This document shows, piece after piece, positions 9,858 through 60,532 of a stretch of 64,000 nucleotides of DNA. Below the pieces are notes generated by a model, which made no database searches, was not told the DNA's origin, and saw only the letters and a program-made list of their open reading frames with translations. The position numbers and the translations under genes are program-made. Positions within the stretch are counted from its first letter, which is position 1. Each line of letters opens with the position of its first letter. The stretch lies in the IMG/VR virus record IMGVR_UViG_3300029258_002750, positions 124,001 to 188,000 of that record. One strand, given 5' to 3'.

Positions 9858-9888
9858 CCTCTCAACAATCTCGTTCTCGGTTCTCACA
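9858..9888 (-). promoter_or_regulatory. bipartite motif TGTGAGAAC-N11-TTGTTGAGAGG
   Basis: exact spacing shared by 5 copies. Confidence 0.7.
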
Positions 9889-9924
9889 GAGTTATTGTAA
9901 GTAGCGCTGACCGAGCGGTTTACG

Positions 9925-10197
9925 CTACACCCCTGCGGGGTGCGGCAGGGGACTGGTGTTCTCGGTCTTGACCTCGACGCCAGCGTGGCGGGCGACGTGG
10001 AGAGCGATCTCCTCCAAGGTCTTCCACTCGCGGTAGAGACGGGTGGAGTCGTCGTTGGTGGTGTTGTAGTGGCCGTAGACCTTGGCATCGGCGATCCGCT
10101 GCCACTCCATTCGGAGGCGACGGTGCGCGCGGCGCGCCTTCAGCGCGGCGTGCTCGGCGACGGCCTTCAGACTCGCGTTCGACCTCAGCTTGCTCAT
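9925..10197 (-). CDS. hypothetical protein
   Basis: AAGGAG RBS; bipartite motif upstream. Confidence 0.75.
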   Translation of the reverse strand: MSKLRSNASLKAVAEHAALKARRAHRRLRMEWQRIADAKVYGHYNTTNDDSTRLYREWKTLEEIALHVARHAGVEVKTENTSPLPHPAGV

Positions 10198-10214
10198 GGG
10201 GTTCTCCTTTCACC

Positions 10215-10245
10215 CCTCTCAACAACTCAAGCGTCGGTTCTCACA
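10215..10245 (-). promoter_or_regulatory. bipartite motif TGTGAGAAC-N11-TTGTTGAGAGG
   Basis: copy 2; also preceded by ACTTACA as in copy 1. Confidence 0.7.
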
Positions 10246-10263
10246 GGTATTCTGTAAGTGCAG

Positions 10264-10458
10264 TCAGCCGCCGCGCTTATCACATCCCCCGGTCTCGGGC
10301 TGGTAGGGAGGGCAGCCGCCGCAGGTGCAGTCGCGCTCCTGGGTGCAGTTGTCCTCGGGCACCGGGTAGTAGATGTTCGGGTAGGTCCGGGTGTCCGGCG
10401 CGGCCAGGAGTACGAGCGACGAAAAGACGACGACAAAGACGATCACGGTGTGTGTCAT
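10264..10458 (-). CDS. small exported Cys-rich protein
   Basis: hydrophobic N-terminus; CTQERDCTCGGC. Confidence 0.7.
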   Translation of the reverse strand: MTHTVIVFVVVFSSLVLLAAPDTRTYPNIYYPVPEDNCTQERDCTCGGCPPYQPETGGCDKRGG

Positions 10459-10464
10459 GCCTAC

Positions 10465-10500
10465 GTTCTACCCGGGAGTGTCGCCGACCCGGGGTAGAAC
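10465..10500. promoter_or_regulatory. divergent pair of GGGTAGAAC motifs
   Basis: minus copy 10465-10473 (N6-ATG), plus copy 10492-10500 (then AGGAGG). Confidence 0.75.
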
Positions 10501-10517
10501 TACCGCAGGAGGCAACA

Positions 10518-10880
10518 ATGAGAATCTGGGGTGAGAAGCCTGGTTTCTGGTTGTCAGGGCTCGTGATCGGCGCCTTCTTCGGGCTCGTGCTGCAAGGCTG
10601 TCCGCCCACGAGCGGACCCGCCAAGGGCACGCCCGCCGAGAAGATCAATGCGCTCTGGGAGTCGGTGCCGGTAGACACGATGCAGATGCATCCGGTTCGC
10701 CGGACTCCTACTCCCCACGGCTGGCTCGTCGTCAGCGGCAACGGTGGTTCGGTGAATTCGGTGACCTACGTTCCCGATCACGAGCACACCTGGCTCGCGG
10801 TGCCGAAGCCCAAGCCGACGCCGCCCACGGCGGCCGAGATCACCGCCGACGACTGGGGAGGAGCGAGTGATGGGCAGTAA
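10518..10880 (+). CDS. putative lipoprotein
   Basis: signal + LQG-C lipobox; AGGAGG RBS. Confidence 0.7.
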   Translation: MRIWGEKPGFWLSGLVIGAFFGLVLQGCPPTSGPAKGTPAEKINALWESVPVDTMQMHPVRRTPTPHGWLVVSGNGGSVNSVTYVPDHEHTWLAVPKPKPTPPTAAEITADDWGGASDGQ

Positions 10881-12174: not shown

Positions 12175-12310
12175 GAAGCAGCCGCTCATGGTCCGCGTGC
12201 GGGGCCTGGTCTGGTGCCGGGTCTGCGGCAAGGTGCACGAGCGGCGCTCGCAGATGGCCGAGTGCACGCGGTCGGAGTGGTACGCGCTGTGGAGGGAGAA
12301 GATCAGGTAG
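12083..12310 (+). CDS. basic Zn-finger protein
   Basis: WCRVCGKVH...C. Confidence 0.6.
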   Translation: MDNWPSRSRGELQREAAAERKRKEAKKKRREKQPLMVRVRGLVWCRVCGKVHERRSQMAECTRSEWYALWREKIR

Positions 12311-20344: not shown

Positions 20345-20769
20345 AGCTAGAGACCGACCGCGTTTACCGAATCAAGGCGACTGTGTCACTTGCCTACGGG
20401 GGTCGGCTGGTTCGCATCGCGGCTCTCATCGGCGGCGGCGACGTGGGGGTCGGCTGGTTCCTCGACGCACCATCGGCGCAGACCGAGCGCTGGTTCTACG
20501 CGTCCGAGCTGGAGCCCGCGTCGGCCATCGATCTGCTGGCCGCCCTCGCCCCACGAGAGCCGAGTCAGCGCCGACCTCCCTCCTGTGAGGAGAATCGGGC
20601 CGCGCAGTCCGTGACCGAGCACCTGGTCAGGCAGCGGTACCAGTCTCCGTCGGCGATCGAGCGGCTGGCGGCGGTTACGGATGCGGCGGCTCGAGAGCGA
20701 GTGCGGGTCTACGATGATCGTGTGCGGGAGCTGGAGGAGTTCTTCAGGCTGACGCTGCCGGGGAGCTAG
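20341..20769 (+). CDS. SH3-like protein with two C-tag copies
   Basis: WFYASELEP SAIDLLAAL ... SAIERLAAV. Confidence 0.8.
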   Translation: MKLETDRVYRIKATVSLAYGGRLVRIAALIGGGDVGVGWFLDAPSAQTERWFYASELEPASAIDLLAALAPREPSQRRPPSCEENRAAQSVTEHLVRQRYQSPSAIERLAAVTDAAARERVRVYDDRVRELEEFFRLTLPGS

Positions 20770-21062
20770 CTCGCGGCGGCCAGCGCTTCGAGATCGGCCA
20801 GCAGCGAGACCAGCCGAGCCTTCTTGACGCGGCGCTCGGCGGCCATCGAGCCGATGACGCTCGCGAGCGTCTGGGTGAAGGGGACCCGCTCCAGCCGCTT
20901 GGTGGTGGGGTTCCAGTCGAGCCCGTAGGTGGTCCGGCCAACGAGCCCGAGCCGGGCGCGGATGTGGGCGACGGCCCACTGGCTGTCGGCGGCGACCTCG
21001 TCGCCGTGGTCGGGCAGCAGGGGAACGATCGCAGTCAGCAGCTCGGTCTTCGTCTTCCTCAT
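20766..21062 (-). CDS. hypothetical protein
   Basis: ATG 21062, GGGAG RBS, bipartite motif upstream. Confidence 0.7.
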   Translation of the reverse strand: MRKTKTELLTAIVPLLPDHGDEVAADSQWAVAHIRARLGLVGRTTYGLDWNPTTKRLERVPFTQTLASVIGSMAAERRVKKARLVSLLADLEALAAAS

Positions 21063-21081
21063 GGCGGCTCCCTTCTCTGCC

Positions 21082-21112
21082 CCTCTCAACAACCGAGCGG
21101 CGCGTTCTCACA
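21082..21112 (-). promoter_or_regulatory. bipartite motif TGTGAGAAC-N11-TTGTTGAGAGG
   Basis: copy 3. Confidence 0.7.
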
Positions 21113-21387
21113 CGCGATGACCGCCGGACATCGCCCCCCGACGTAAGTGCTTGAAAAAGGGGCGCGGCCGAGATGGCAACCTGAGCCCCCATATGAGGAA
21201 GAACCTGACGACCTCGACGACCCTGGCTGCCGCAGGCCCGATCGACGACGCCCGATCGACGACGGACAGCTTGGGCTGCACCCTGGTCGATGCAGTGCCT
21301 CTAAGCCCCCCAACCGAGGCCCCGTCCGACACACATAACGACGCCAAAGGACATACGTCGCTCCATCCTCAATAAAGGACTTAGGGT

Positions 21388-22413: not shown

Positions 22414-22414
22414 G

Positions 22415-22423
22415 GGGTAGAAC
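22415..22423 (+). promoter_or_regulatory. GGGTAGAAC putative promoter
   Basis: abuts last palindrome, upstream of HTH gene. Confidence 0.65.
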
Positions 22424-22442
22424 GAGGGTACTCGGGGGTCCG

Positions 22443-22673
22443 GTGAACCTGGCGCAGAGAGCCCGTATAGCCACAGGACTTAGCCAGCGCGAGCTGGCCA
22501 GGCGGCTTGGGGTCAGCCACTCGAGCTTCGAGCGCTGGGAGGCCGGAACAGTACCATCGTCGATGGCGCGCAACTTGTTGAGGCTGATCGAGTTGCACCC
22601 GCAGTTTGTTCTCGACGAGTTGGAGAAGAACGGGCCAGCGGTGTCCAACGGCCCATCCCGGGGCGCCACTTGA
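22443..22673 (+). CDS. XRE-family HTH regulator (HigA/MqsA-like)
   Basis: RARIATGLSQRELARRLGVSHSSFERWEAG...P. Confidence 0.85.
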   Translation: MNLAQRARIATGLSQRELARRLGVSHSSFERWEAGTVPSSMARNLLRLIELHPQFVLDELEKNGPAVSNGPSRGAT

Positions 22674-41141: not shown

Positions 41142-41150
41142 GTTCTACCC
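41142..41150 (-). promoter_or_regulatory. GGGTAGAAC putative promoter, leaderless
   Basis: 6 nt before ATG 41135. Confidence 0.75.
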
Positions 41151-41662
41151 TACGCGGCCGAGAGGGAGAACACCTCCGCGTTCGCGTCGAGCAGGGCGCC
41201 GAGTGAGGTAACGACGTCATCGTTCGGTGCGCCCTCCGGCCACCACCGGACCACGATCGGCTCGAGGTTCCGCTCCAGCAGGGCGCGCACGTCATCCCAG
41301 TGGCACGGGTGGCGGTGCTCGTGGAACAACTCGGTCGCCCACAGCGCGGCGAGCAGGATCCTCTCCAGCTTGTCGCGGCCCGATGGTGTGATCTGCTCAC
41401 GGAGCTGCGGACCCTCGTCCTCGTAGAAGGCGAAACAGCTCGGCCGGAACTGCGGGAAGACCTGGCAGATGAGGTAGTCGATGTAGGACTGGTAGTGGTC
41501 GGGATCGTCGCCCCCGGCCACGGTTTCCACTGCCGCCTTCAGCTTGCTCCGGTCGTGGAGCGTCTTCTCGATGAGCGGAAAGATGGTCGTAGTGGTGCCG
41601 CCGTCAATCTCCAGCCCGAGCACGAGTTGGAGCTGAACGGTCTGGGTGAGTTGCAAAAGCAT
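41150..41662 (-). CDS. hypothetical protein with C-tag
   Basis: GGAGG RBS; DVVTSLGAL. Confidence 0.75.
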   Translation of the reverse strand: MLLQLTQTVQLQLVLGLEIDGGTTTTIFPLIEKTLHDRSKLKAAVETVAGGDDPDHYQSYIDYLICQVFPQFRPSCFAFYEDEGPQLREQITPSGRDKLERILLAALWATELFHEHRHPCHWDDVRALLERNLEPIVVRWWPEGAPNDDVVTSLGALLDANAEVFSLSAA

Positions 41663-41741: not shown

Positions 41742-41772
41742 CCTCCCAACAGCTCACCGGCCCGTTCTCACG
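41742..41772 (-). promoter_or_regulatory. degenerate bipartite motif CGTGAGAAC-N11-CTGTTGGGAGG
   Basis: same N11 spacing as the other copies. Confidence 0.5.
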
Positions 41773-45225: not shown

Positions 45226-45241
45226 AGGGGAGAGGGGCGCT

Positions 45242-46536: not shown

Positions 46537-49500
46537 ATGAACCTGACCGAGCTTAGGGACTCCTGCATCCAGTGCGTGTGCAAGCATCTTGCCCAGGCCG
46601 AGGTGCTGATGGGCGAATCGGTCCAGGGTTACCCCGAGCACAGGTGGCTGGCGATTGGTCATATGGGCGAGGCGGCTGACGAGTGCTGCAAGGACTTCCC
46701 GAAGCTCGCGGCCGAGATCCGCAAGCACCGGACGCGTTACATGGCCGATCCCTCCTACTCCGTTCCGGTCATGGAGCTGATCGAGAAGGCGAATCGCATG
46801 GCGACCAAGACCGAGAACATCCAACCGGCGCGTACCCTCGATGAGGCCCTGGCCTTTCTGGATGAGGGGCGGCGGCGGAAGCACCGGGAGACGGAGCTAC
46901 TCACGCCCGCGCAACTGCACGCTCTGGTGAATCACGAGGCCGACCAGGACTACCTCAAGTGGGCGCACGGCTTCGCCAGCCGCTACAACGAGCGCGCCGG
47001 TCTCGATCTGCACGGGCCGGGCGGCGACGCCAAGGGCGCCGCCGAGGTTGCCGAGCAGGCCGAGGCGCTCGACGACGAGCGAGTCGACGGCCGGTTGGAC
47101 GAGGGCTCGTGGAAGGACAAGTTCTCCGAGCAGTGGCCCGGTGGTCCAGTCTCGCAGGACGAGAAGCTGTTCAAGGACCACGGCCACAAGCTCGGCGACT
47201 GGCTCCGCAAGTTCATGGACGACAACATCCCGAAGAAGGCCAAGGGGTGGCTCGCCAGCAAGAGTCAGGCGAAGTGGTACAAGAAGGGCCTGGAGGAGCT
47301 TGAGAAGGCGGCGAAGGCCGGTGGCGAGCCCCCGCCACCTCCGAAGAAGAAGAAGAAGTTCAAGCCCAGCCACTACCAGCAGGCGATCTTCGACTGGGTC
47401 GCCGATGCGTCGAAGAAGGACAAGGCCGCGCTCGTCGTGGACGCGAAGGCGGGCGCGGGAAAAAGCACCACCATGGAGCAGGCGCTCGAGTTCGTGCCGC
47501 CCGGCCAGAAGGTCGTGTTCCTGGCCTTCAACACCGACATTGCCAACGCGCTGGCCGAGCGCGTCAAGGACATGAAGAACGTCGAGGCCGCGACGATCAA
47601 CGCCTACGGGCGCGCGTCGGTGGTCAAGGCGTTCAAGAAGGGCGGCAAGCCGCCTGAGCTGGTGAAGAACAAGAACCGGCTCATCTGCGACGAGCTGGTG
47701 AAGAAGCTCGCCCCCGACAAGAAGACAGCCGAGAAGTACGAGTCGACCTACGGCTACGACATGGGCGAGGCCATCACCAAGCGCAAGATGATGGGCACGC
47801 TCGACGAGAAGGGCGAGATGCAGTTCCCGCCCTGGAAGGAGGTCTTGGCCAGGTTCGAGATCGACCTTCCGACGTCTGGGACCCAAGGCGAGTACCTCAC
47901 GCCGCAGCAGGTCACGGACACGCTGGAGGAGGCGTTCCAGCGGAGTGTCGATGACAAGGTGACGATGGAGTACGCCGACCAGGTGCTCTGGCCGGTGATG
48001 CACAACCTGCCGATCATCAGCCGGGCGACTGGGAAGAAGGCCAACCTCGACTGGGCGATGGTTGACGAGGTCCAAGACCTCTGCCCGCTCGAGCGCGAGT
48101 TCGCCAAGCGACTCGCCCCGCGCCACATGCTGGTGGGCGACCCGAACCAGTCGATCTACGCCTTCAAGGGCTCAGATCCCGACTCGATGTCGAAGATGCA
48201 GGAGCAGCTCGGCGCGGAGGAGAAGCCGCTCTCGATCTGCTATCGCTGCCCGAAGAAGGTCATCACCGAGGCGCAGACGCTCGTTCCCACGATCGAGGCG
48301 GCCCCGAACGCACCTGACGGCGACGTCCAGACCATCAAGCACGCGCAGTTCTACGAGACCCTCAAGCCGGGGGACTTCGTGCTCTGCCGCACCAACGCGC
48401 CGAACGTGGCCGCCGCGCTGGGGCTGATCGCTCAGGGCAAGAAGGCGAACGTCGTCGGCCGTGACATCGGGAAGTCCCTGAGCAGGCTGATCGAGAGGAT
48501 CGGCGGCAAGAAGGGCCACAAGGACATGCCCATCGACGAGTTCGCTGGGAAGGTGCAGAGCTGGCACGCGAAGGAGACCAAGCGGCTGACGGCCGAGAAG
48601 AAGGAGCACTTGCTCCAGGGTCTCGACGACAAGCGCGACTGCCTCCAGGCTCTCATGTCGAAGGGCGACGTGAAGGTCGCCGGTGACCTGATCAAGGTGG
48701 TCAACCAGCTGTTCGTGCAGGACCCGACACCGGCCATCAACTTCTCCTCGGTGCACAAGGCGAAGGGTCTGGAGGCGGACAACGTCTACATCCAGCGGCC
48801 CGACCTCCTGCCGCTACCGAAGGCGCTGAAGTCCGAGGATCCGGTCCAGATCCAGCAGGAAGACAACCTCAAGTACGTGGCGATCACGCGCGCGAAGAAG
48901 GCGCTGACGTGGGTCCTGCCGCCGCCGAAGGAGGGCGAGGACGAGGGGCCGACCGCTCCGCTGCCGTCACCGCCTCCGCCTCCCAAGCCCTCGCCCGCGC
49001 CTCCCCCGCCACCCGCGCCGGAGGCGAAGAAGCCCAAGGCGAAGAAGAAGGTCACCAAGAAGAAGAAGGTCACCAAGAAGAAGGTCAAGAAGAAGAAGGT
49101 CACCAAGAAGAAGGTCAAGAAGAAGGGTGTCACGAAGGCCGACATCGCCAAGCTGATGTCGATGATCCCGGACGACGCCACAATGGCCGACTGGGGCGAG
49201 TCAATTGACCCGAACGGCGCGACGCTGTTCGAGCGTGTTGTCGGGGTCCTCGATGAGGGTGCCGACTTCACCAAGGGCCGACGGAAGGTCTCCAAGAAGA
49301 AGCTGGTCGCGAAGAAGAAGGCTGCGGCCAGCGTCAAGATGCCCAAGAACGCGGCCCAGGCGGCCGAGCAGATCAAGGCCGCGCTGGCGAAGGGCGATCA
49401 GGCGACGGCGAACCGCGTCTGGGAGCTGTACGTGCACGGCGGCGGGCTGGGCGAGCCGGGGATGTGGGGCTACCAGTCGCGCAAGGCCGACATTCGCCAG

Positions 49501-51789
49501 ACCAAGCTCGCCAAGCTCGGCGTCTCGTGGAAGGGGTCTGGGCCGGTCGTCGAGGGGAAGGAGACGACTGCGGATCTGGTGCTGGCCGAGGTGAACGCGC
49601 TGACCGGAGGGAACACCATCAGCGCGACCGCGCTGGCCAGGAAGATCGGTCGAGCGCGAGGAACCGTCGTCAAGGCGGCCAGTAGGCTGGCCATGCGCGG
49701 CAAGATCGAGCGGTTGTCTGGTCTGGACGTCTACGCGCCTCTTCGAGAGGGGCGCGAGGTCAACAAGGACGGCACGATGTCCTGCGGCGTCTTCCTGCCG
49801 GTGCCGTCGAACCTGGCTCGCTACTTCCCGGACAAGAGCGAGGAGGACGACTCGGTCCCGCACTTCACGGTGCTCTACGCCGGTGATCTCTCGCCAGCTG
49901 ACTACGGGAAGCTGGTCGATGTGGTCGGCAAGGTCGCTCGGAAGCACGAGCCCTTCCTGATGCGGATGGGCGGCTACGGCGAGTTCACGAACAACAACGG
50001 CCAGACGATCCCGCACATGATCGGCAACGCCTGGCCCGAGAAGGCGAGCCTCAACGATCTGCACGCGGCTATCCGCAAGGCGGCCGAGCAGGCCGGTGTT
50101 CCGATCGCGCACACGTATGGACCAAACGAAGACAAGAAGAAGGGCTACGCCGAACAGTTCAAGGCGCACGCGACGCTGGCCTACATCAACCCGGGCGAAC
50201 CGGCCTACAAGGGCCACAGGCCCGAAGGGAGCTGGAAGGTGACCGACCTGGAGCTGTGGGGCCACGAGAAGTATCGGGTGCCGCTCGGTGCGACCGTGAC
50301 CGAGGACTACAAGGCGACCAAGAAGAAGGCGAAGAAGAAGGCGAAGAAGCCCAAGGGGTCCAAGGCATTCCTCAAGGACGTGGAGGAAGCCGCCAGCAAG
50401 CTCGCTGGCAAGCCGCTCAAGGTCGACAAGCACTCGACGACGCTTGGGAAGGGATTCGACTACTCGTTCAAGAGCGGTGGCCGGTTCAAGATCCGGCTTC
50501 GCCCGGATGGCTCGTTCACGGTCAAGCTCCAGGGACAACCGAAGCCGCACTATCGCTACCGGGGCGACGGCGCGACCCTCGCTGGCGCGCTGGCTTCGAT
50601 GAAGTCGGAGAAGACCAAGGGTAAGAAGCCTCCCGAGCACCACGTGCAGATCGCGAAGGCCGGGAAGAAGCCCAAGATGAAGCCGTGGGCAGTCGGCGAG
50701 CCTGGCCCCAAGCAGGCGAAGGTGAATGGCATCATGCTGTTCAACGACCTGGGCGTGGACCAGGAGACCTGGGACCGCTACGCGACGGCCTGCAAGGACT
50801 CGATGGACCTGCTCAAGAAGCGCGGCTTCGGCTTCATGCTGCCGAACGTGACGATGCACCTCCGCACCGGCACGGCGCTGGGAAACTACGACATGAAGAC
50901 GAAGATCGTCGAGATCTTCGTGAACACGATCGGCGCGAAGCAGACTCCGGCCAAGATCATGACCACGATGGTCCACGAGATGGGACACCACTACTACTAT
51001 CGGGAGATCCCTCGCGCGCGCAGGAAGACCTACGCCTGGTACTTCGGGCTCGCGAAGAAGCCAACCGAGAAGGGGAAGAAGCACGGCGACTTCCCCAGCT
51101 CCTACGGGGCGACGAAGCGCTACGAGGACTTCGCCGAGATCTTCGCGGCCTACATCGGCAAGGGGCACAAGATCCAGAGTCGCTACAAGCTCACGAAGGA
51201 CATCATGGACCGCTTCCGTACGTTCATGGCGCCCGACAAGCGCGTGGACCTGCGCGAGGACGAGGAGCTGTTCGGCGATGGCCTCTCGTCGGTGCTCGAG
51301 CGGCGCGAGGTGGTGACCCTGGGCGTCTGCTGCGCGCTCTGCGAGGCCGAGGGCAGCAAGACCGGAGGGGGCAGCAAATGGGTGCATCCGCTGGCGCTGC
51401 TCGCCAGGAGGCGCGCCAGGATCGATGCCAGGGACGGTCACGACGACGCGGCCGAGTATTGGCGCGGGTGGGCTGTCGGTTCGTTCCTGACGGCCAAGAA
51501 GGGCAAGGGCGACGACCCGGGCAGCAAGAGCACTCATCGTCTCGCGCTCCGCGCGCGCGACTGGGCCGAGAAGGATGACGAGGAGGGGCACAGCGACGCG
51601 GCCGAGTACTGGCGCGGGTGGGCAGCCGGGGCGTTCCTGACGGCCGAGGCTGTGGACTTCCCTCACCGCTACAGCTCGCCTGCCCAGGGCTCCTCGCGCA
51701 CGGGCGTGGGGACTGCTCCCGTCGAAGACCCGGGGGAAGCGCTGCCGCCGCCCGCGAAGCGGCGGAAGCTGAAGACGCCGCGCCCGTAA
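46537..51789 (+). CDS. 1750-aa polyvalent protein: UvrD/SF1 helicase + 2H phosphoesterase + zincin metallopeptidase-like
   Basis: AKAGAGKST, DEVQD, VGDPNQSIYAF, YRCP, SVHKAKGLE, YVAITRAK; PHFT (49858) and HATL (50167); HEMGH (50974) ...EDFAE. Confidence 0.9.
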   Translation: MNLTELRDSCIQCVCKHLAQAEVLMGESVQGYPEHRWLAIGHMGEAADECCKDFPKLAAEIRKHRTRYMADPSYSVPVMELIEKANRMATKTENIQPARTLDEALAFLDEGRRRKHRETELLTPAQLHALVNHEADQDYLKWAHGFASRYNERAGLDLHGPGGDAKGAAEVAEQAEALDDERVDGRLDEGSWKDKFSEQWPGGPVSQDEKLFKDHGHKLGDWLRKFMDDNIPKKAKGWLASKSQAKWYKKGLEELEKAAKAGGEPPPPPKKKKKFKPSHYQQAIFDWVADASKKDKAALVVDAKAGAGKSTTMEQALEFVPPGQKVVFLAFNTDIANALAERVKDMKNVEAATINAYGRASVVKAFKKGGKPPELVKNKNRLICDELVKKLAPDKKTAEKYESTYGYDMGEAITKRKMMGTLDEKGEMQFPPWKEVLARFEIDLPTSGTQGEYLTPQQVTDTLEEAFQRSVDDKVTMEYADQVLWPVMHNLPIISRATGKKANLDWAMVDEVQDLCPLEREFAKRLAPRHMLVGDPNQSIYAFKGSDPDSMSKMQEQLGAEEKPLSICYRCPKKVITEAQTLVPTIEAAPNAPDGDVQTIKHAQFYETLKPGDFVLCRTNAPNVAAALGLIAQGKKANVVGRDIGKSLSRLIERIGGKKGHKDMPIDEFAGKVQSWHAKETKRLTAEKKEHLLQGLDDKRDCLQALMSKGDVKVAGDLIKVVNQLFVQDPTPAINFSSVHKAKGLEADNVYIQRPDLLPLPKALKSEDPVQIQQEDNLKYVAITRAKKALTWVLPPPKEGEDEGPTAPLPSPPPPPKPSPAPPPPPAPEAKKPKAKKKVTKKKKVTKKKVKKKKVTKKKVKKKGVTKADIAKLMSMIPDDATMADWGESIDPNGATLFERVVGVLDEGADFTKGRRKVSKKKLVAKKKAAASVKMPKNAAQAAEQIKAALAKGDQATANRVWELYVHGGGLGEPGMWGYQSRKADIRQTKLAKLGVSWKGSGPVVEGKETTADLVLAEVNALTGGNTISATALARKIGRARGTVVKAASRLAMRGKIERLSGLDVYAPLREGREVNKDGTMSCGVFLPVPSNLARYFPDKSEEDDSVPHFTVLYAGDLSPADYGKLVDVVGKVARKHEPFLMRMGGYGEFTNNNGQTIPHMIGNAWPEKASLNDLHAAIRKAAEQAGVPIAHTYGPNEDKKKGYAEQFKAHATLAYINPGEPAYKGHRPEGSWKVTDLELWGHEKYRVPLGATVTEDYKATKKKAKKKAKKPKGSKAFLKDVEEAASKLAGKPLKVDKHSTTLGKGFDYSFKSGGRFKIRLRPDGSFTVKLQGQPKPHYRYRGDGATLAGALASMKSEKTKGKKPPEHHVQIAKAGKKPKMKPWAVGEPGPKQAKVNGIMLFNDLGVDQETWDRYATACKDSMDLLKKRGFGFMLPNVTMHLRTGTALGNYDMKTKIVEIFVNTIGAKQTPAKIMTTMVHEMGHHYYYREIPRARRKTYAWYFGLAKKPTEKGKKHGDFPSSYGATKRYEDFAEIFAAYIGKGHKIQSRYKLTKDIMDRFRTFMAPDKRVDLREDEELFGDGLSSVLERREVVTLGVCCALCEAEGSKTGGGSKWVHPLALLARRRARIDARDGHDDAAEYWRGWAVGSFLTAKKGKGDDPGSKSTHRLALRARDWAEKDDEEGHSDAAEYWRGWAAGAFLTAEAVDFPHRYSSPAQGSSRTGVGTAPVEDPGEALPPPAKRRKLKTPRP
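49041..49130 (+). repeat. AAGAAG(AAG)GTC(ACC) microrepeats encoding a KKKVT linker
   Basis: read directly. Confidence 0.8.
51445..51645 (+). repeat. 150-nt-period repeat encoding DAAEYWRGWAxGxFLTA twice
   Basis: copies 51445-51495 and 51595-51645. Confidence 0.85.
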
Positions 51790-55775: not shown

Positions 55776-57239
55776 ATGACCACGCTGACCGCACTGCTGC
55801 TCGAGGCCCGTCGAGGCAGGATGGGCCGCTCCGGCCGCCGCCGTCCGCTCAAGACGGCTCCGCGTCACAAGACATCGGCCAGGCGCGAGAAGAAGTCCGC
55901 CAAGCCCATCAAGATCACCAAGGAGATGCTCAAGAAGGGCGTCAAGCCCGAGGGCGTCACCTGGAAGGACTGGATGCAGGCAGGCGGCAAGTTCGGTGGC
56001 GGTACAGGCAAGCCCAGGCCGAAGAAGCTCCGCGTCCCGAGCCATGTGGAGGTTGAGATCGGCCGCTGGGCGCTCGATCGGGTCTACATCAGCGACTCGA
56101 ATCTCGAGCACCACCTCCAGCGATCTGGCCGCAAGGGAGATCTCCCGCACACGGCCGCATGGGTCGGTACGGACAAGGAGCGGATGAAGCTCCTGCTCAA
56201 GTTAGGCGTTCGTCACTACCGCAAGAAGGGCCGGAAGTCGAAGGAGAAGGAGAAGGCGAAGTCGGTCTCGAAGTCGATGGGGAAGGCGCTCTCGGCCGAC
56301 CCGTTCGCGGGAGCCAGCTGGGGAGACGAGGACAAACTCCAGCAGACCGGCTGGTGGGGCGTGGGCGGCGGCAAGAAGGCATCGAAGCGGCTCCCGAAGC
56401 CGAAGCCGAAGCTCACGCCCGAGCAGCAGAAGCTCCGAGATCTGGTGAGCGGCTTCAAGAAGAAGATGTCGCACATCCCGCGTACGGCGGCCGGTGGCAT
56501 CGTCTTCAAGACGTTCGAGGGTCCCGATCTCTGGGATCTGCCGGTGCTGGCCTGCCAGGTCGCGCCCAAGTACGGCACCTACTGGGTGTTCCCGAAGGGT
56601 GGTCTCGACATTGGCGAGAGCCTGCACAAGGGGGCGGCTCGCGAGGTCAAGGAGGAGAGCGGTGTTCGTGCGAAGGTCGCGAACAACCAGGCGCACGTTA
56701 CCAAGAGCAAGTTCGGTGACCGTGGCAAGTACGACCTTCCGCTCATCCTGAAGCTGATGAAGGAGCAGTACCCCAAGGAGGCCAAGTTCATCGAGTCCCA
56801 GGCTGAGGAGATCAAGGGGATGTTCTTCTCCTGGGAGAATGAGACCCACTACTACGTGATGAAGCACACCGGCGGCTCGCCGGGGTCTGGCACCGATCAC
56901 GAGATGGCCCGCTCCGAGTGGGTATCGCTGCGCGACGCGTTCAAGCGCAGCTATCGGATGGAGGAGGTCGTCACGAAGCTCTTCCCGGTGATCAGGCGGA
57001 TGTGGAAGCCGACCGGCGAGGCGAAGAAGCCGCTGCCGATCTCGGCGCTGCGGACGCCCAAGCCGAAGACGATGCCGGTCGGCAAGCCATCGGGCAAACC
57101 GATCGGCCCGAGCCGGATCGTGATTACACCGGCCACGAAGCAGTCGCAGAAGCACACGCCGCTGAAGCAGTGGCCGCCGCCGAAGAAGCAGACCAGCTAC
57201 AAGAGCTACCCGATCTGGAAGCTCTACGGCGGCAGCTAG
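55776..57239 (+). CDS. Lys-rich protein with Nudix hydrolase domain
   Basis: WVFPKG + Nudix box GGLDIGESLHKGAAREVKEESGV. Confidence 0.9.
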   Translation: MTTLTALLLEARRGRMGRSGRRRPLKTAPRHKTSARREKKSAKPIKITKEMLKKGVKPEGVTWKDWMQAGGKFGGGTGKPRPKKLRVPSHVEVEIGRWALDRVYISDSNLEHHLQRSGRKGDLPHTAAWVGTDKERMKLLLKLGVRHYRKKGRKSKEKEKAKSVSKSMGKALSADPFAGASWGDEDKLQQTGWWGVGGGKKASKRLPKPKPKLTPEQQKLRDLVSGFKKKMSHIPRTAAGGIVFKTFEGPDLWDLPVLACQVAPKYGTYWVFPKGGLDIGESLHKGAAREVKEESGVRAKVANNQAHVTKSKFGDRGKYDLPLILKLMKEQYPKEAKFIESQAEEIKGMFFSWENETHYYVMKHTGGSPGSGTDHEMARSEWVSLRDAFKRSYRMEEVVTKLFPVIRRMWKPTGEAKKPLPISALRTPKPKTMPVGKPSGKPIGPSRIVITPATKQSQKHTPLKQWPPPKKQTSYKSYPIWKLYGGS

Positions 57240-57628
57240 CTCTCGCTCGGATCAGGGTGCGTCGCGGCCAGCACATCGATCGTGCTGGTCGAGTCGCCGA
57301 CGATCGCCTGGATCTCGGCTGCGCTGACGCCCTTCAGGATGAGCGCTCGCATGAGGCGCAGGATCGCCTCGCTCTTGGCGCTCTCCCGCGTGTCCTTCGA
57401 TCGCCAGCCGCAGCTCGGACAGAACGGCTGGGCCAGCTCCCAGGAGGCGGCCACGATCTGCACGCGGGAGGTCTTGATCGAGGACTTCGTGAAGCCGACG
57501 CCCTCCCAGGGGTAGGGCGCCGACATGGTGACGTTGTAGAGCGCGACCAGCTTGCCGTCACAGCCTGGCGCCGGGCAGGGGCACGCCTCGAACTCGTTGG
57601 CCTTGCTCCAGTTCTTGTCCTTCGCCAT
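57236..57628 (-). CDS. Zn-ribbon protein with degenerate C-tag
   Basis: CP.PGC...CPSC; STIDVLAAT. Confidence 0.75.
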   Translation of the reverse strand: MAKDKNWSKANEFEACPCPAPGCDGKLVALYNVTMSAPYPWEGVGFTKSSIKTSRVQIVAASWELAQPFCPSCGWRSKDTRESAKSEAILRLMRALILKGVSAAEIQAIVGDSTSTIDVLAATHPDPSES

Positions 57629-57634
57629 GCGATC

Positions 57635-57643
57635 GTTCTACCC
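57635..57643 (-). promoter_or_regulatory. GGGTAGAAC putative promoter, leaderless
   Basis: 6 nt before ATG 57628. Confidence 0.75.
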
Positions 57644-57648
57644 CGGCC

Positions 57649-58467
57649 TCAGCTGATCTTGCCGGTCTTCTCGGTGATCTTGGTGGCCAGCACATGGAGC
57701 TTGCGATCTGCGATCTTCTTCTTGGCCTCCTCCCAGGCCGTCCACGACTTGATCCACTCGGTGAGCTTGTTCTTCCACTGGACTAGGGCGTCGCCCTTGG
57801 CTCGCGCGATGGCGTGTTCGACCTCGTTCGCGTTCCAGCTCGTGTCTCCCTTGGTCTTGCCGTTGAGCAGTTCCCTCTTGGCCTCGGTTCGCGCGGTCCG
57901 AATGTGGCCGATCAGAGCGCCCTCCCTTTCGGCCAGCCCCTCGGCCCACTCGCGTTGGAAGTCGACGATGGCCGCACGTCGGATGTCCTTGTGCTTCGCT
58001 GTGTAGACGATCCCGTTCTTGGTGATCGAGCGCGCGATCCCCTCCTGGTGCTCCTTGCAGCGCTGGGCGAAGGCTTCCACCGAGTCCCGGATTTCCTTCA
58101 CGAGGTCGCGGGCCGCGTGCTCGCGAAGCGCCTTCTCAGCTTGCGCCTCCTTCTTCAGCTCCTCGAGAATCTCCTCGGCCTTCACCTTGTTTCGGCCGAG
58201 GTCCACGACCTCGAACTGGGCGTCGTAGCGCTGCCAGTCCTGGTAGGGCGCGCGCGGCTCGGCCCCGAGCATCGTCACGATGTCGACCTCACTTCCCCAG
58301 GCCCCGCGCATCGCGGCGACGAGGTCGCGGGTCTTACTGGAGAGCCTCCACTCCCACCTGTGGCGCAGGCCATAGTACTGGAACGTGCGCAGGCCGCGCG
58401 TGCGGGTGGCCAGAGTGATCTCCGGCTTCTCGTCAGCCTTGGTGGTCTCGGTGGTCTCTTCGGTCAC
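57649..58467 (-). CDS. coiled-coil hypothetical protein
   Basis: long clean ORF, coupled. Confidence 0.8.
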   Translation of the reverse strand: MTEETTETTKADEKPEITLATRTRGLRTFQYYGLRHRWEWRLSSKTRDLVAAMRGAWGSEVDIVTMLGAEPRAPYQDWQRYDAQFEVVDLGRNKVKAEEILEELKKEAQAEKALREHAARDLVKEIRDSVEAFAQRCKEHQEGIARSITKNGIVYTAKHKDIRRAAIVDFQREWAEGLAEREGALIGHIRTARTEAKRELLNGKTKGDTSWNANEVEHAIARAKGDALVQWKNKLTEWIKSWTAWEEAKKKIADRKLHVLATKITEKTGKIS

Positions 58468-59297
58468 GCTGCCTTCTCTTCGGCCTCGGGCGTCTTGAAC
58501 CAGTCCGGCTCGCGCCAGCCGTCTTCCTTCGCTTCCTCGATTGAGTCGTAGCCGGAGGCGATGGCCTCGTCTTCGGGTGTCCAGGTCTCACCCCTGTTGA
58601 TCGCCTGGCGGCCCTCGTATGTCAGGTCGATCTCGTCGCCGTCGTGCGAGCTGTCGTAGTCGGTGTCGGCATTGGCGAGCACGTAGCCCCATCCACCGCA
58701 CAGCTTGCACACGTCCTTCGCGTAGGGCCTGCCGCCCATGTGCCCCTCGCCCTCGCATCGGGGGCACGCCCAGACGGGCGCGTCGTGCGGCGAGGCGTAG
58801 TGATGGCTCTCCTCGCGCGCCTTGTGCAGCAGCTTCAGGATGGGCAGTACTTGCTCTTCGCACCCCGCGTACTCCAGCAACGCCATGGCGAGCCGGACGA
58901 CTTCGTGCGCAGGCTGCTCTCGCGCGAACTTGCCGACTGGTGAGGAGTAGCCCTCGATGATCTTGTCCACGGCCAGGGAGAAGACGACCTCGCGCTCGGC
59001 GTCGGCCTTTGCCTCGGCCTCGGTCTTCTTCGCAACCTCGGCCAGCTTCTCGACCGCGCTCATGTCGTGGCGGTCGCACAACTTCTTCGCCGACTCGTGT
59101 GCCAGCTGCCAGAGCCTTTCCTCCTCTTCGTCGAGGCAATTCCTGGGCTCCAGCCCTTCGCAGATGGTGTGCTCGTAGCGATACCGCGCGAGGGACAGGT
59201 CGGTGCCGAGACTCGCGACGTGGGACAGGAACTCCTCCTTGGTGAGCGGGGTGTTGTGCCCGTCCGGGACCGGAACGTATCGCCGCTGGTAGGTCAC
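58464..59297 (-). CDS. hypothetical protein with DnaJ-like CxxCxGxG Zn finger
   Basis: CPRCEGEG...CKLCGGWG. Confidence 0.75.
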   Translation of the reverse strand: MTYQRRYVPVPDGHNTPLTKEEFLSHVASLGTDLSLARYRYEHTICEGLEPRNCLDEEEERLWQLAHESAKKLCDRHDMSAVEKLAEVAKKTEAEAKADAEREVVFSLAVDKIIEGYSSPVGKFAREQPAHEVVRLAMALLEYAGCEEQVLPILKLLHKAREESHHYASPHDAPVWACPRCEGEGHMGGRPYAKDVCKLCGGWGYVLANADTDYDSSHDGDEIDLTYEGRQAINRGETWTPEDEAIASGYDSIEEAKEDGWREPDWFKTPEAEEKAA

Positions 59298-59467
59298 TTC
59301 TTCTCCGTGCACCGCTTGCAGCGTCGCCGTCTCGCGATCGGTTTGCTCGCGTCGACCAGCGTGTAGTGACCGCACTCCAGGTACTCGACGCGGAACTGGC
59401 TCATGACCGACTCGCCGTTCGGCTTGTCGTTCGACTGTCGCACGACCCTGCGGAGCGGAGCGGCCAT
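59294..59467 (-). CDS. small Zn-finger protein
   Basis: LECGH...RRCKRC; both ends coupled. Confidence 0.7.
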   Translation of the reverse strand: MAAPLRRVVRQSNDKPNGESVMSQFRVEYLECGHYTLVDASKPIARRRRCKRCTEKK

Positions 59468-60483
59468 TAGTAGCGCGCCCCAGAGATTCCGCTCGCGCTC
59501 ACGTAGTCCGGGTCGCCGGGGATGGCCGAGGCGCCGACCGTCGCGGGCTCCTCGGTGGTCCCGTTTGCGGCCTTCTCCAGCTTGTTGACGAGCTTCTCGA
59601 AGAAGCCGCGCTGCTTGCCGCCCGGCGCGAACGAGCCGAACTTGACGACCTTCGCGGCGATGTCCTTGATCGCGTTGCGCTCGTAGTCGTCGAGCTTGCT
59701 CGCGCCAGCGTCCCACGCCTTCCGGGAGCGGTTGATCAGTTCGGCGTCGTCGGCCGCCAGCTCGGCCAGGTCGTCGTCGGGGACCGGCTGGGTGGGCTCG
59801 CCCATCTTGACCGTCTCGGGCTCCGGCTCGCTGGCCTTCTGGGCGTCCAGCTCGGCCTGCTTGTCGAGCACCGGCTCGAGCCGCTTGATCCACTCCTGCG
59901 CGGTCTTCCGCACGCAGGTGCCGTCGAGCACCTTGTAGGCGTTCTTCGAGAGTGCCTTGCGGTCGTACCAGGAGAGGACCGACCGTGCCTTGTAGCCGGT
60001 CTTGTGGAAGAGCGCGTAGACCGTCTGGCGCGCCGTCTTGTCCTCCTCGACCGAGAGACCGCGCGTCTCCAGCAGCTCCAGGCAGAGGTCTTCGCAGACC
60101 TTCACCTTCATCGCGGCCTTGCACTTGGACATCTCCTTGTCCCAGCGCTTGAGGGCCTCGAGCTTCTCGGCCGACTCCGGCACCGCGTCCAGCCAGTCGG
60201 TGATGCACTTGGACCCGACCGGGGAGAGGGTGACCTCCTCGGTTCGCACGAGGCCGGTCGCGACCTTGCCGAGCGCGGTCGGCGTGTCGGGCGCCTCGAA
60301 GTGGATCGCGAAGAGCCACTTGATGTTCTTGTGCTCGCAGAGGATGCAGTCGTCGCCGTCGTCCTCGTAGCCGATGAACTCGGGGTGTGCGAAGGCGACG
60401 TCGTGGTCGCCGAGGCCGTGCTTCGCGAACACCTCGGCGCGCTTCAGGTTGTGCTTGTTGATCGTCTTCTTGCTGAGTGCCAC
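59467..60483 (-). CDS. hypothetical protein with Zn finger
   Basis: CILCEH...VGSKCI; AAGGAG RBS. Confidence 0.8.
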   Translation of the reverse strand: MALSKKTINKHNLKRAEVFAKHGLGDHDVAFAHPEFIGYEDDGDDCILCEHKNIKWLFAIHFEAPDTPTALGKVATGLVRTEEVTLSPVGSKCITDWLDAVPESAEKLEALKRWDKEMSKCKAAMKVKVCEDLCLELLETRGLSVEEDKTARQTVYALFHKTGYKARSVLSWYDRKALSKNAYKVLDGTCVRKTAQEWIKRLEPVLDKQAELDAQKASEPEPETVKMGEPTQPVPDDDLAELAADDAELINRSRKAWDAGASKLDDYERNAIKDIAAKVVKFGSFAPGGKQRGFFEKLVNKLEKAANGTTEEPATVGASAIPGDPDYVSASGISGARY

Positions 60484-60501
60484 TGTGTGACTCCTTCCAC
60501 C

Positions 60502-60532
60502 CCTCTCAACAACCAGGCGTCTGGTTCTCACA
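60502..60532 (-). promoter_or_regulatory. bipartite motif TGTGAGAAC-N11-TTGTTGAGAGG
   Basis: copy 4. Confidence 0.7.

What the first reader, a model, noticed from the sequence alone, without database searches (positions are those of the whole stretch)
9858..60532. Second, bipartite upstream motif TGTGAGAAC-N11-TTGTTGAGAGG
Four exact-spacing copies (9858, 10215, 21082, 60502) and one degenerate copy (41742) lie on the minus strand. The exact copies are about 18-22 nt upstream of untagged genes; the degenerate one is about 80 nt upstream. Two copies also have ACTTACA 7 nt further upstream. The fixed spacer between two conserved boxes suggests a distinct promoter class (e.g. early or alternative-sigma) or a regulator site. 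It shares AGAAC with the GGGTAGAAC motif.
Basis: partly seen in the sequence, partly recalled or inferred. Interest (0 to 1): 0.6.

Follow-up and report, generated by a model that had tools for sequence, protein, structure and literature searches.

The report
Second promoter-like motif of a jumbo phage
A 31-base two-box motif sits just upstream of 13 genes, mostly at the heads of gene blocks, in an uncultured 275-kb T4-like phage; it is most likely a phage-specific promoter joined to a conserved mRNA leader, which is a new example of an ordinary kind of phage control signal.

Summary
The window holds four exact copies and one degenerate copy of TGTGAGAAC-N11-TTGTTGAGAGG (0 expected by chance).

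The window is part of a complete 275,101-bp metagenomic phage with a T4-like portal, about 35 tRNAs, a tmRNA and an ECF-like sigma protein. Genome-wide there are 13 copies.
- All have an 11-nt spacer, are intergenic and point at the next gene.
- Eight of 13 lie at heads of same-strand gene blocks (p = 8e-6).
- In 10 of 13 a strong Shine-Dalgarno sequence follows at a fixed distance, and the start codon lies 14-21 nt after the motif.

Between related phages the boxes stay 91-92% identical while the spacer drops to 62%. There is no RNA fold, no Rfam match and no copy in cellular genomes.

In a more distant relative, box 1 reads TGTAGAAC. That is the hexamer of the abundant GGGTAGAAC motif, which itself looks like a -10-only promoter for leaderless mRNAs.

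Best reading (about 0.45): box 1 is a -10-like element, transcription starts in the spacer, and box 2 plus the Shine-Dalgarno sequence form a conserved leader or operator. Main rival (about 0.2): a true -35/-10 promoter. No transcript data exist, so no start site has been shown.

It is a new member of a known kind, of moderate interest.

The parts
9858..9888 (-). Motif copy 1 (exact): TGTGAGAAC-CGAGAACGAGA-TTGTTGAGAGG
   Evidence: sequence read. It is 21 nt before the ATG of the gene at 9375-9836.
9896..9902 (-). ACTTACA box, 7 nt upstream of copy 1. It belongs to a C(T/C)ACTTA(C/G) sub-motif seen at 4-5 copies genome-wide.
   Evidence: In four genome copies and one G001 copy, ACTTA starts 14 nt before the first base of box 1.
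9375..9836 (-). Downstream gene of copy 1 (153 aa, no family match), with the Shine-Dalgarno sequence GAAGGAG
   Evidence: Own gene caller. No significant Pfam or PHROG hit.
10215..10245 (-). Motif copy 2 (exact): TGTGAGAAC-CGACGCTTGAG-TTGTTGAGAGG
   Evidence: It is 17 nt before the ATG of the gene at 9925-10197, and only 18 nt after the stop codon of the upstream gene.
10253..10259 (-). ACTTACA box, 7 nt upstream of copy 2
9925..10197 (-). Downstream gene of copy 2 (90 aa, unknown function)
21082..21112 (-). Motif copy 3 (exact): TGTGAGAAC-GCGCCGCTCGG-TTGTTGAGAGG
   Evidence: It is 19 nt before the ATG of a lone minus-strand gene at 20766-21062, so it heads its own unit. ACTTAC lies at 21143-21148.
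20766..21062 (-). Downstream gene of copy 3 (98 aa, unknown function)
41742..41772 (-). Motif copy 4 (3 mismatches): CGTGAGAAC-GGGCCGGTGAG-CTGTTGGGAGG, with a long (79 nt) leader
   Evidence: It sits at the head of a minus-strand unit at a divergent junction. Its G001 orthologue keeps both boxes.
41150..41662 (-). Downstream gene of copy 4 (170 aa, unknown function)
60502..60532 (-). Motif copy 5 (exact): TGTGAGAAC-CAGACGCCTGG-TTGTTGAGAGG
   Evidence: It is 18 nt before the GTG of the gene at 59467-60483 and heads a 5-gene minus-strand unit. Orthologous copies exist in G001 and G006.
60546..60554 (-). GGGTAGAAC (class-1 motif) in tandem, 13 nt upstream of copy 5
   Evidence: The tandem arrangement is kept in G001 (14 nt apart) and in G006 (4 nt apart).
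59467..60483 (-). Downstream gene of copy 5 (338 aa, unknown function). Its orthologues were used to find relatives.

Best explanation
The motif is a phage-specific promoter joined to a conserved leader.

Box 1 (yGTGAGAAC) is a -10-like element of the same family as the abundant GGGTAGAAC motif. It is read by host RNA polymerase core carrying a phage specificity factor. The 295-aa ECF-like protein, which has a sigma region 2 and no detectable region 4, is the candidate factor.

Transcription would start in the spacer, at about motif positions 16-18 (a C followed by G or A). That corresponds to roughly window 9871-9873, 10228-10230, 21095-21097, 41755-41757 and 60515-60517 on the minus strand.

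Box 2 (GTTGTTGrGAGG), which runs straight into an extended Shine-Dalgarno sequence (GrAAGGAG), would then form the first ~25 nt of a 30-36-nt mRNA leader. It would act as a strong translation-initiation region and/or as the site of a regulator.

Shown: the motif exists, is under selection, is oriented, is coupled to the Shine-Dalgarno sequence, is enriched at unit heads and is related to GGGTAGAAC.

Inferred: the start site, the factor that reads it, and what box 2 does.

The confidence of 0.45 is for this specific anatomy. The general statement that the motif is a promoter-associated cis-regulatory cassette I put at about 0.75.
For: 1. Real and selected.
- 13 genome copies, all with an 11-nt spacer, all intergenic and all pointing at the next gene.
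- Neither box occurs alone in intergenic DNA.
- Between seven G000/G001 (or G004) orthologue pairs, box 1 is 92% and box 2 is 91% identical, against 62% for the spacer and 46-58% for the flanks (Fisher p = 4e-7).

2. Promoter-associated.
- 8 of 13 copies lie at heads of same-strand gene runs (binomial p = 8e-6).
- At several heads (for example 201119-201238 and window 20766-21112) it is the only conserved candidate signal.
- No sigma-70-type site lies near window copies 1 and 2.

3. Box 1 belongs with GGGTAGAAC.
- In the relative G006 (58% amino-acid identity) all six copies read yGTGTAGAAC-TTyyGGCCAGC-GTTGTTrGCG. There box 1 carries the TAGAAC hexamer and differs from GGGTAGAAC by one base.
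- GGGTAGAAC itself is invariant in G001 and G006.

4. GGGTAGAAC behaves as a -10-only promoter.
- 26 of 56 copies lie exactly 6 nt before ATG or GTG, with a pyrimidine at -1 in 25 of 26.
- Only 2 of the 19 tagged genes scored have a Shine-Dalgarno sequence.
- Copies that lie 16-27 nt from the start do have a Shine-Dalgarno sequence in between.
- Copies occur back to back at divergent junctions.

5. The class-2 spacer shows the same ...G-Y-R signature. C is at position 16 in 18 of 24 copies and G at position 17 in 16 of 24. G006 has C-A at the same distance from GTTGTT.

6. Box 2 continues at a fixed distance into the Shine-Dalgarno sequence. All 11 class-2 genes scored have one.

7. The factor.
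- The phage encodes a sigma-like protein. Pfam Sigma70_r2 scores above its cut-off, and fold matches are to ECF sigma-E region 2.
- No region 4 was found, and all homologues are in this clade.
- The gene lies in an operon headed by a sigma-70-like promoter.
- No phage RNA polymerase beta or beta-prime domain was found.
Against: - No transcript 5' end is available. All ten runs listed as holding this DNA are DNA metagenomes.
- GAGAAC lacks the T at -12 and, like TAGAAC, has C at -7. Its reading as a -10 element therefore rests on analogy with class 1, which is itself inferred.
- The implied gap between hexamer and start site is 7-8 nt, one or two nt longer than in class 1.
- If box 1 alone were sufficient, the strict co-occurrence and fixed spacing of box 2 would need a separate, unknown function.
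- The TGT...TGT direct repeat stays exactly 21 bp apart in both lineages while AGAAC shifts by 1 nt. That looks more like a protein contacting both boxes on duplex DNA.
- The sigma link is circumstantial, and the structural model is of low confidence (pLDDT 62).
Confidence: 0.45

Rival explanations
1. A true bipartite promoter. Box 1 is a -35-like element (GTGAGA matches TTGACA at 4 of 6 positions). Box 2 carries an extended -10 (TG-T-TGAGAG). The A-rich patch just upstream is an UP element. A modified host holoenzyme or a phage sigma reads it, and transcription starts about 7 nt after box 2, inside the Shine-Dalgarno region.
For: - The 11-nt spacer is strictly fixed in all 13 copies.
- GTGAGA to TGAGAG gives a 17-bp spacer.
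- The A-rich patch lies at -8 to -3 (A at -4 in 18 of 24 copies).
- A37 is highly conserved (20 of 24).
- The copies sit at unit heads.
- The phage has its own sigma-like protein, and two neighbouring proteins show weak helix-turn-helix or sigma-like hits.
Against: - The putative -10 (TGAGAG) lacks A at -11 and T at -7, and the base before the implied start is a purine.
- The leader would begin inside the Shine-Dalgarno sequence.
- In G006 the putative -10 positions change to TTrGCG while GTTGTT is kept.
- In G006 box 1 becomes the same hexamer that acts as a -10-type element 6 nt before start codons elsewhere.
- The AAC-to-GTT distance is 10-14 nt, too short for the roughly 17-18 nt I recall for ECF promoters.
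- No region 4 was detected in the sigma-like protein.
Confidence: 0.2
2. An operator on double-stranded DNA. A phage-encoded regulator binds the two TGT-containing direct repeats (TGTGAGA and TGTTGAGA), which lie 21 bp (two helical turns) apart. It switches the adjacent promoter on or off, for example to shut off or activate a gene set. The promoter proper lies elsewhere, such as at the upstream ACTTA or GGGTAGAAC elements.
For: - The TGT-to-TGT distance stays at 21 bp in G000 and G006 even though AGAAC moves by 1 nt.
- The two boxes resemble each other.
- The boxes never occur singly.
- Several copies have another candidate promoter element just upstream: GGGTAGAAC or GGGTATAAC at four copies, and ACTTA at fixed spacing at four.
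- Small helix-turn-helix proteins are encoded, for example at G000 45112-45297, which has Mor-like and sigma region 4-like hits.
Against: - The upstream elements differ between copies, so there is no common promoter for the operator to control.
- At some heads nothing else is conserved.
- The tight fixed link to the Shine-Dalgarno sequence is not expected for a pure DNA operator.
- No binding protein has been identified.
Confidence: 0.13
3. A purely RNA-level element in the 5' untranslated region. It would be a translational enhancer or operator for a phage RNA-binding protein (RegA-like control) or for the ribosome. Transcripts would start further upstream.
For: - Start codons lie 14-21 nt after the motif in 10 of 13 copies. 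In G006 all six copies have the start 24-28 nt after GTTGTT.
- Box 2 is contiguous with the Shine-Dalgarno sequence.
- The copy at genome position 1831 is followed by a conserved hairpin that sequesters the Shine-Dalgarno-like sequence.
Against: - There is no consensus RNA structure (RNAalifold energy -0.01 kcal/mol).
- Spacer changes are not compensatory.
- There is no Rfam match in the window.
- Enrichment at unit heads and very short upstream intergenic space, such as 18 nt after the preceding stop codon at copy 2, leave little room for a separate promoter.
- Three copies lie 79-98 nt from the start codon.
Confidence: 0.1

Closest known systems
T4-type phage promoter classes: early UP/-35/TGn/-10, middle MotA box 12 +/- 1 bp from the -10, late -10-only read by gp55 (PMC2988021 for early and middle; the late class is from general knowledge)
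   Same: - The genome is T4-like: a gp20-type portal and blocks of small ORFs.
- It has several repeated, highly conserved promoter-like motifs.
- The motif is a two-box signal with a fixed gap of about 11-12 bp, like a MotA box plus a -10.
- The motif has an A-rich patch upstream and a TG dinucleotide.
- The companion GGGTAGAAC motif looks like a -10-only class, as T4 late promoters are.
   Different: - Neither box matches the sigma-70 -10 or -35 consensus.
- No MotA or AsiA homologue was looked for or found.
- Box 2 is not a TAnnnT element.
- The motif is welded to the Shine-Dalgarno sequence.
- The sequences are unrelated to any T4 consensus.
[quoted passage not shown]
   Same: - These are repeated, asymmetric, one-orientation motifs immediately upstream of start codons of a subset of genes.
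- They include a two-part upstream extension with a spacer.
- They are conserved gene by gene across related phages.
- The consensus drifts between sub-lineages.
   Different: - The SAS (GGGATAGGAGCCC) contains the Shine-Dalgarno sequence itself.
- The extended SAS is a pair of 17-bp imperfect inverted repeats with a variable 4-13-bp spacer.
- Here the boxes are not an inverted repeat and the spacer is fixed at 11.
- The sequences are unrelated and the phage is a T4-like myovirus rather than a siphovirus.
PeSL cassettes (early promoter plus stem-loop) of T4-like phages (PMC2839356, PMC4122927)
   Same: These are short, repeated regulatory cassettes that flank small, variable ORFs in T4-like genomes. 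Identical boxes next to unrelated genes could likewise act as recombination points.
   Different: - A stem-loop partner is not a constant part of this motif.
- Only some copies have a nearby hairpin.
- No indel or shuffling event bounded by the motif was demonstrated here.
ECF sigma-factor promoters (-35 with an AAC core, about 16-18 bp, then a short -10)
   Same: AAC ends box 1 and GTT lies in box 2. The phage sigma-like protein resembles ECF sigma-E region 2.
   Different: The AAC-to-GTT distance is 10-14 nt instead of about 17-18. No region 4 was found in the protein.

Membership tests
Sigma-70 (housekeeping) -35/-10 promoter | TTGACA-like hexamer, 16-18 bp spacer, then TAnnnT with A at position 2 and T at position 6 | tested here: not met
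   The consensus scan of window 9700-10600 found 0 sites. In the best register, GTGAGA-N17-TGAGAG, the second hexamer lacks both the A at position 2 and the T at position 6.
Sigma-70 (housekeeping) -35/-10 promoter | A mapped transcription start 6-8 nt downstream of the -10 element | not testable with these tools
   No RNA run holds this sequence.
ECF sigma promoter | An AAC-containing -35 and a short -10 (CGT or GTT type), separated so that AAC to GTT is about 17-18 nt | tested here: not met
   The AAC-to-GTT distance is 10 or 13 nt in G000 and 11 or 14 nt in G006. The reference spacing is taken from memory of published ECF consensus sequences.
ECF sigma promoter | A cognate ECF sigma with both sigma-2 and sigma-4 domains is encoded | tested here: inconclusive
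   A sigma-2-like domain is present (Pfam r2 25 bits against a cut-off of 24; fold hits to sigma-E region 2). No region 4 was found in residues 140-295. The structural model is of low confidence.
T4 middle (MotA-type) promoter | An activator box centred near -30, lying 12 +/- 1 bp upstream of a good sigma-70 -10 (TAtaaT) | tested here: not met
   The 11-bp spacing is compatible, but box 2 contains no TAnnnT element. The definition is taken from PMC2988021.
-10-only phage promoter (T4 late/gp55-like architecture), the same family as GGGTAGAAC | A single conserved 8-9-bp element with no conserved -35, and a start about 7 nt downstream | tested here: inconclusive
   - Box 1 shares G at position 2 and AGAAC with GGGTAGAAC, and equals it bar one base in G006.
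- A Y-R step lies 7-8 nt downstream.
- There is no conserved -35 upstream.
- However, box 2 is obligatory and no start site has been mapped.
Cluster K SAS / extended SAS | A GGGATAGGAGCCC-like 13-mer 3-8 bp before the start; the extended form is a pair of 17-bp inverted repeats with a variable spacer | tested here: not met
   The sequence is unrelated, the boxes are not inverted repeats, and the spacer is fixed at 11. The definition is taken from PMC3203893.
Structured RNA element (Rfam family or conserved hairpin) | A conserved secondary structure with compensatory changes, or a match to a curated covariance model | tested here: not met
   There is no Rfam hit in the window at gathering score. 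RNAalifold gives a consensus energy of -0.01 kcal/mol on 23 copies, with 5 weak pairs.
PeSL promoter-terminator cassette | An early promoter directly preceded by a terminator-like stem-loop, bounding indels between close relatives | tested here: inconclusive
   Hairpins lie upstream of some copies (copies 1 and 5), but not at a fixed position. Indel boundaries were not analysed.

The most novel reading that the evidence does not exclude
This phage clade runs a two-tier system on one -10-only recognition element (AGAAC), read by a sigma-2-only, ECF-like phage sigma.
- Most sites (GGGTAGAAC-N6-ATG) would fire leaderless mRNAs.
- At about 13 unit heads the element is paired with a second TGT-repeat exactly two helical turns downstream. 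That repeat would re-engage the same factor or a dedicated regulator, acting as a sigma-dependent promoter-proximal pause or checkpoint, before a strong ribosome-binding site is transcribed.

If true, this would be a new promoter architecture and a new minimal sigma type in an uncultured jumbo T4-like phage.
Probability: 0.1. Interest if true: 0.7.

Novelty: new member of a known kind. Interest (0 to 1): 0.42.

Why it matters
If the reading is right, this uncultured 275-kb T4-like phage from saline sediment and water metagenomes carries at least two phage-specific promoter classes built on an AGAAC element.
- One class makes leaderless mRNAs.
- The class studied here has a conserved leader and a strong ribosome-binding site at the heads of about a dozen transcription units.

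That would give a ready-made map of its transcription units. It would also provide a testable cognate pair, the ECF-like sigma-2 protein and an AGAAC element. And it would be one more case, beside T4 and the Cluster K mycobacteriophages, of start-linked motifs whose mechanism is open.

The practical value is modest until a host or RNA data exist.

Tried and rejected
- **RNA hairpin through the spacer.** The AACCAG/CTGGTT pairing in copy 5 is not kept in its G001 orthologue. RNAalifold on 23 copies gives -0.01 kcal/mol. Rejected.
- **Known RNA family.** No Rfam hit in the window.
- **Housekeeping promoter.** No sigma-70-type site at copies 1 and 2. Only about six sigma-70-like sites were found in all intergenic DNA, none at the motif.
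- **ECF -35/-10 reading.** The spacing is too short.
- **A TAAC-N16-GTTGC element 42 nt upstream as an ECF promoter.** It occurs at only two paralogous loci, so it is not a general feature.
- **CAAC between the Shine-Dalgarno sequence and the start pairing with GUUG of box 2.** It is not universal, and it also occurs at genes without the motif. Dropped.
- **Host promoter type or prophage.** An exact-consensus scan of one genome from each of 185,579 species gave one chance hit, in 44% GC coding DNA.
- **Mobile element.** The flanks of the copies are unrelated.
- **Transcript evidence.** No RNA run holds the region.
- **Near relatives among cultured phages.** None by DNA or protein search.
- **Wider relatives by loose patterns.** The metagenome scan returned only the same G000- and G001-type lineages, and a second viral scan returned only chance hits. 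Searches with the 338-aa protein recovered only the G000-like, G001-like and G006 contigs, four loci in all.
- **Phage RNA polymerase.** No beta or beta-prime Pfam hits. The single-subunit search was uninformative because its control failed.
- **Host identity.** Not resolved. The atlas neighbours of the sigma protein (Chloroflexota) are only a weak lead.

Full report
**1. Observation**

The pattern TGTGAGAAC-N11-TTGTTGAGAGG occurs on the minus strand at window 9858, 10215, 21082 and 60502 as exact matches, and at 41742 with 3 mismatches. None of 100 dinucleotide-preserving shuffles gave a match.
- Start codons lie 21, 17, 19 and 18 nt after the exact copies and 79 nt after the degenerate one.
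- A GAAGGAG-type Shine-Dalgarno (SD) sequence lies between motif and start in the four exact copies. The degenerate copy has its SD (GGAGGAAGG) only next to its distant start codon.
- ACTTACA lies 7 nt upstream of the first two copies.

**2. Context**

The window is bases 124,001-188,000 of a single 275,101-bp, 65% GC virus record with direct terminal repeats. The record encodes:
- a T4-type portal and a prohead protease interrupted by an intein;
- a DnaB-like helicase, a DNA polymerase and a tape-measure-like protein;
- a class II ribonucleotide reductase;
- about 35 tRNAs and a tmRNA;
- about 420 mostly small genes (own composition-based caller).

It has no near relative among cultured phages. 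It is found only in sediment and seawater DNA metagenomes, and no RNA run holds it. The host is unknown.

**3. Genome-wide anatomy**

There are 13 copies, at genome positions 1831+, 20620+, 100876-, 107539-, 119918-, 133858-, 134215-, 145082-, 165742-, 184502-, 201134-, 267618- and 267728+.
- Every copy has an 11-nt spacer. Scans with spacers of 8-15 added no new site.
- All copies lie in the 10% of the genome that is non-coding, and all point at the next gene on their own strand.
- Ten of the 13 are 14-21 nt from a start codon.
- In intergenic DNA the two boxes never occur separately.
- Eight of the 13 copies lie at the head of a same-strand gene run. Such heads make up 42 of about 421 genes (binomial p = 8e-6).

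A profile of 24 non-redundant copies from this phage and its relatives shows, in order:
- an A-rich patch at -8 to -3;
- yGTGAGAAC;
- a G+C-rich spacer with a semi-conserved G15-C16-G17 and G20;
- TTGTTGrGAGr;
- a purine run leading into the SD at a fixed distance (A37 in 20 of 24).

All 11 motif-bearing genes scored have a GGAG or GAGG core at -17 to -5. The figure is 57% for other genes and 2 of 19 for genes tagged by GGGTAGAAC-N6-ATG. The downstream genes are mostly small and of unknown function. The exceptions are a MoxR-like ATPase and an ADP-ribosylglycohydrolase-like protein.

**4. Relatives**

An exact-pattern scan of IMG/VR and of metagenome contigs found the motif repeatedly, but only in high-GC contigs of the same phage clade. 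The low-GC hits are single chance matches.

A related genome fragment, G001 (78-82% amino-acid identity), has 8 copies against 0 for the reversed control pattern.

In seven orthologous pairs (six with G001, one with G004), box 1 is 92% and box 2 is 91% identical. The spacer is 62% identical and the flanks 46-58% (Fisher p = 4e-7). The boxes are therefore under purifying selection and the spacer largely is not.

A more distant relative, G006 (58% identity), has six copies of a diverged version: yGTGTAGAAC-TTyyGGCCAGC-GTTGTTrGCGsrg-(SD)-ATG. Three things follow.
- The signal is old and gene-linked. The 338-aa gene keeps it in all three lineages.
- Box 1 there carries TAGAAC and differs from GGGTAGAAC by a single base.
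- The distance from TGT to GTTGTT is kept although AGAAC has moved by one base, so the TGT...TGT repeat stays 21 bp apart.

No cellular genome among 185,579 species representatives carries the consensus, apart from one chance hit in 44% GC coding DNA.

**5. The companion motif**

GGGTAGAAC has 56 copies in this genome when GGGTATAAC is counted with it. The exact 9-mer occurs 29 times in G001 and 34 times in G006. It is relevant because box 1 resembles it.
- 26 copies lie exactly 6 nt before ATG (24) or GTG (2), with a pyrimidine at -1 in 25 of 26. Nothing upstream is conserved.
- These genes lack an SD.
- When the motif lies 16-27 nt from the start, a canonical SD lies in between.
- At divergent junctions two copies stand back to back, each 6 nt from its own start.

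This is the geometry of a -10 element with the transcription start 7 nt downstream, which would give leaderless mRNAs. It is not the geometry of a ribosome-binding substitute. This is an inference; no 5' ends are available.

**6. Who could read it**

No RNA polymerase beta or beta-prime domain is detectable. The single-subunit search was uninformative.

The phage does encode a 295-aa protein with a Sigma70_r2 hit just above Pfam's cut-off.
- It shows weak sequence similarity to ECF sigma-E.
- Its best fold matches are ECF sigma-E region 2 (TM-score 0.6-0.7 by target, Foldseek probability about 1, weak E-values; model pLDDT 62).
- Its C-terminal 155 residues have no Pfam match and carry four invariant cysteines.
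- Only four homologues exist in 5.8 billion clustered proteins, all from this clade. One is the 84%-identical orthologue in G004.
- The gene lies in an operon headed by one of the few sigma-70-like promoters in the genome, GTGACA-N17-TATTCT at 56037.

A sigma with region 2 but no recognisable region 4 fits a promoter class that has only a -10 element.

**7. Mechanism**

Putting this together, the best-supported model is as follows.
- Box 1 is a -10-like element of the GGGTAGAAC family.
- Transcription starts at the C/G step in the spacer, at motif positions 16-18.
- Box 2 plus the SD is the conserved beginning of a 30-36-nt leader. It acts as a translation-initiation region and/or a regulator site.

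Three loci where GGGTAGAAC stands 2-13 nt upstream of the motif, plus a fourth with it about 60 nt upstream, would then have two start sites.

I give the general statement that this is a promoter-associated cis-regulatory cassette about 0.75, and this specific anatomy about 0.45.

It is helped by the fixed spacer, the 4-of-6 match of GTGAGA to TTGACA, the TG dinucleotide and the UP-like A-patch. It is hurt in three ways.
- The putative -10 has neither key base.
- The start would fall inside the SD.
- The G006 version conserves GTTGTT but not the putative -10.

A duplex-DNA operator gets some support from the 21-bp direct repeat.

A purely RNA-level element gets some support from the SD coupling. 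It is weakened by the lack of any conserved fold, by the enrichment at unit heads and by the short intergenic space upstream.

**8. Comparison with known systems**

In function and layout the motif resembles the repeated promoter classes of T4-type phages (PMC2988021) and their promoter cassettes (PeSLs) next to small variable genes (PMC4122927). [quoted passage not shown]

It fails the defining features of sigma-70 promoters, ECF promoters, MotA-type promoters, SAS/ESAS and structured RNAs. Membership in a -10-only class is plausible but unproven.

**9. Verdict**

The finding is real and non-random, and it is conserved across three lineages of an uncultured jumbo T4-like phage. It is best filed as a new member of a known kind: a phage-specific promoter or leader signal. 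It is moderately interesting. The interest lies mainly in its relation to the GGGTAGAAC leaderless-type promoter and to the unusual sigma-like protein.

Every mechanistic step beyond "oriented, selected, unit-head-associated upstream signal" is inference and needs 5'-end mapping.

No reads tool was used on any stretch.

Noticed in passing
Whole genome; in the window e.g. 6558-, 7973-, 10465-, 10492+, 13282+, 28300-/28310+, 42126+, 57635-: GGGTAGAAC has 56 copies when GGGTATAAC is counted. 26 of them lie exactly 6 nt before ATG or GTG, with a pyrimidine at -1 and no Shine-Dalgarno sequence. Copies 16-27 nt from the start have a Shine-Dalgarno sequence in between. Back-to-back pairs occur at divergent junctions. 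It looks like a -10-only promoter giving leaderless mRNAs. It is invariant in relatives G001 (29 copies) and G006 (34 copies).
   Followed up: partly
window 21388-22424 (inside a ~1.5-kb stretch with no called gene, 21063-22562): Seven copies of a palindromic hairpin, GGTGCCCCCAT(C/G)rTGGGGGCACC. Also a 14-nt tandem repeat (GCCCGATCGACGAC x2, at 21236-21263) and GCCGCCAGG-type repeats. These could be an origin, a terminator array or a non-coding RNA region. Motif copy 3 abuts this region.
   Followed up: partly
G000 59176-60063 (L040:1351-2238:+) and neighbours 56187-57413 and 60060-60752: - A phage-encoded ECF-like sigma region-2 protein of 295 aa. It has a C-terminal half with no family match and four invariant cysteines.
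- Only four homologues are known, all in this clade.
- The operon is headed by a sigma-70-like promoter at 56037.
- Two neighbouring proteins have weak sigma or helix-turn-helix hits.
   Followed up: partly
L001 6525-16678 (G000 6.5-16.7 kb, minus strand): An array of about 35 tRNA genes covering nearly all amino acids, plus a standard one-piece tmRNA with tag peptide ANAPVRLAA. A sigma-70-like promoter (TGGACA-N16-TAGGAT) lies at its head, near 17147.
   Followed up: no
L001:1831-1935 (G000) and its G001 orthologue (L063): The motif copy near the left genome end is followed by a hairpin that pairs the Shine-Dalgarno-like GAGGAG with a downstream CTCCTC, then by CTCTTTC. The hairpin is kept in the relative despite indels. 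After it come GGGTAGAAC and the gene for a MoxR-like ATPase. This may be an attenuator or a short RNA.
   Followed up: no
window 46537-51789 (+): A 1,750-aa protein that combines a UvrD/REP-type helicase with a 2'-5' RNA ligase-superfamily domain. It is the largest gene in the window, and it is not a tape-measure protein.
   Followed up: no
L008:4916-7747 (G000 191916-194747): The prohead core protease gene (Peptidase_S77) carries a Hint domain plus a LAGLIDADG homing-endonuclease insertion, that is, an intein.
   Followed up: no
G000 20574+ and 107591-: Two motif copies (20620 and 107539) share a longer paralogous upstream stretch. It holds TAAC-N16-GTTGC exactly 42 nt before box 1. This looks like an ECF-type promoter but occurs only at these two loci.
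   Followed up: yes
G000 201-265 kb (structural gene block, plus strand): The virion-gene block has neither GGGTAGAAC nor the two-box motif. Its few intergenic gaps carry ordinary -10-like hexamers instead: TAGAAT, TATAAT, TAGGAT, and TTGACC-N17-TAGAAT at 263535. This suggests a third, host-like or late promoter type.
   Followed up: no
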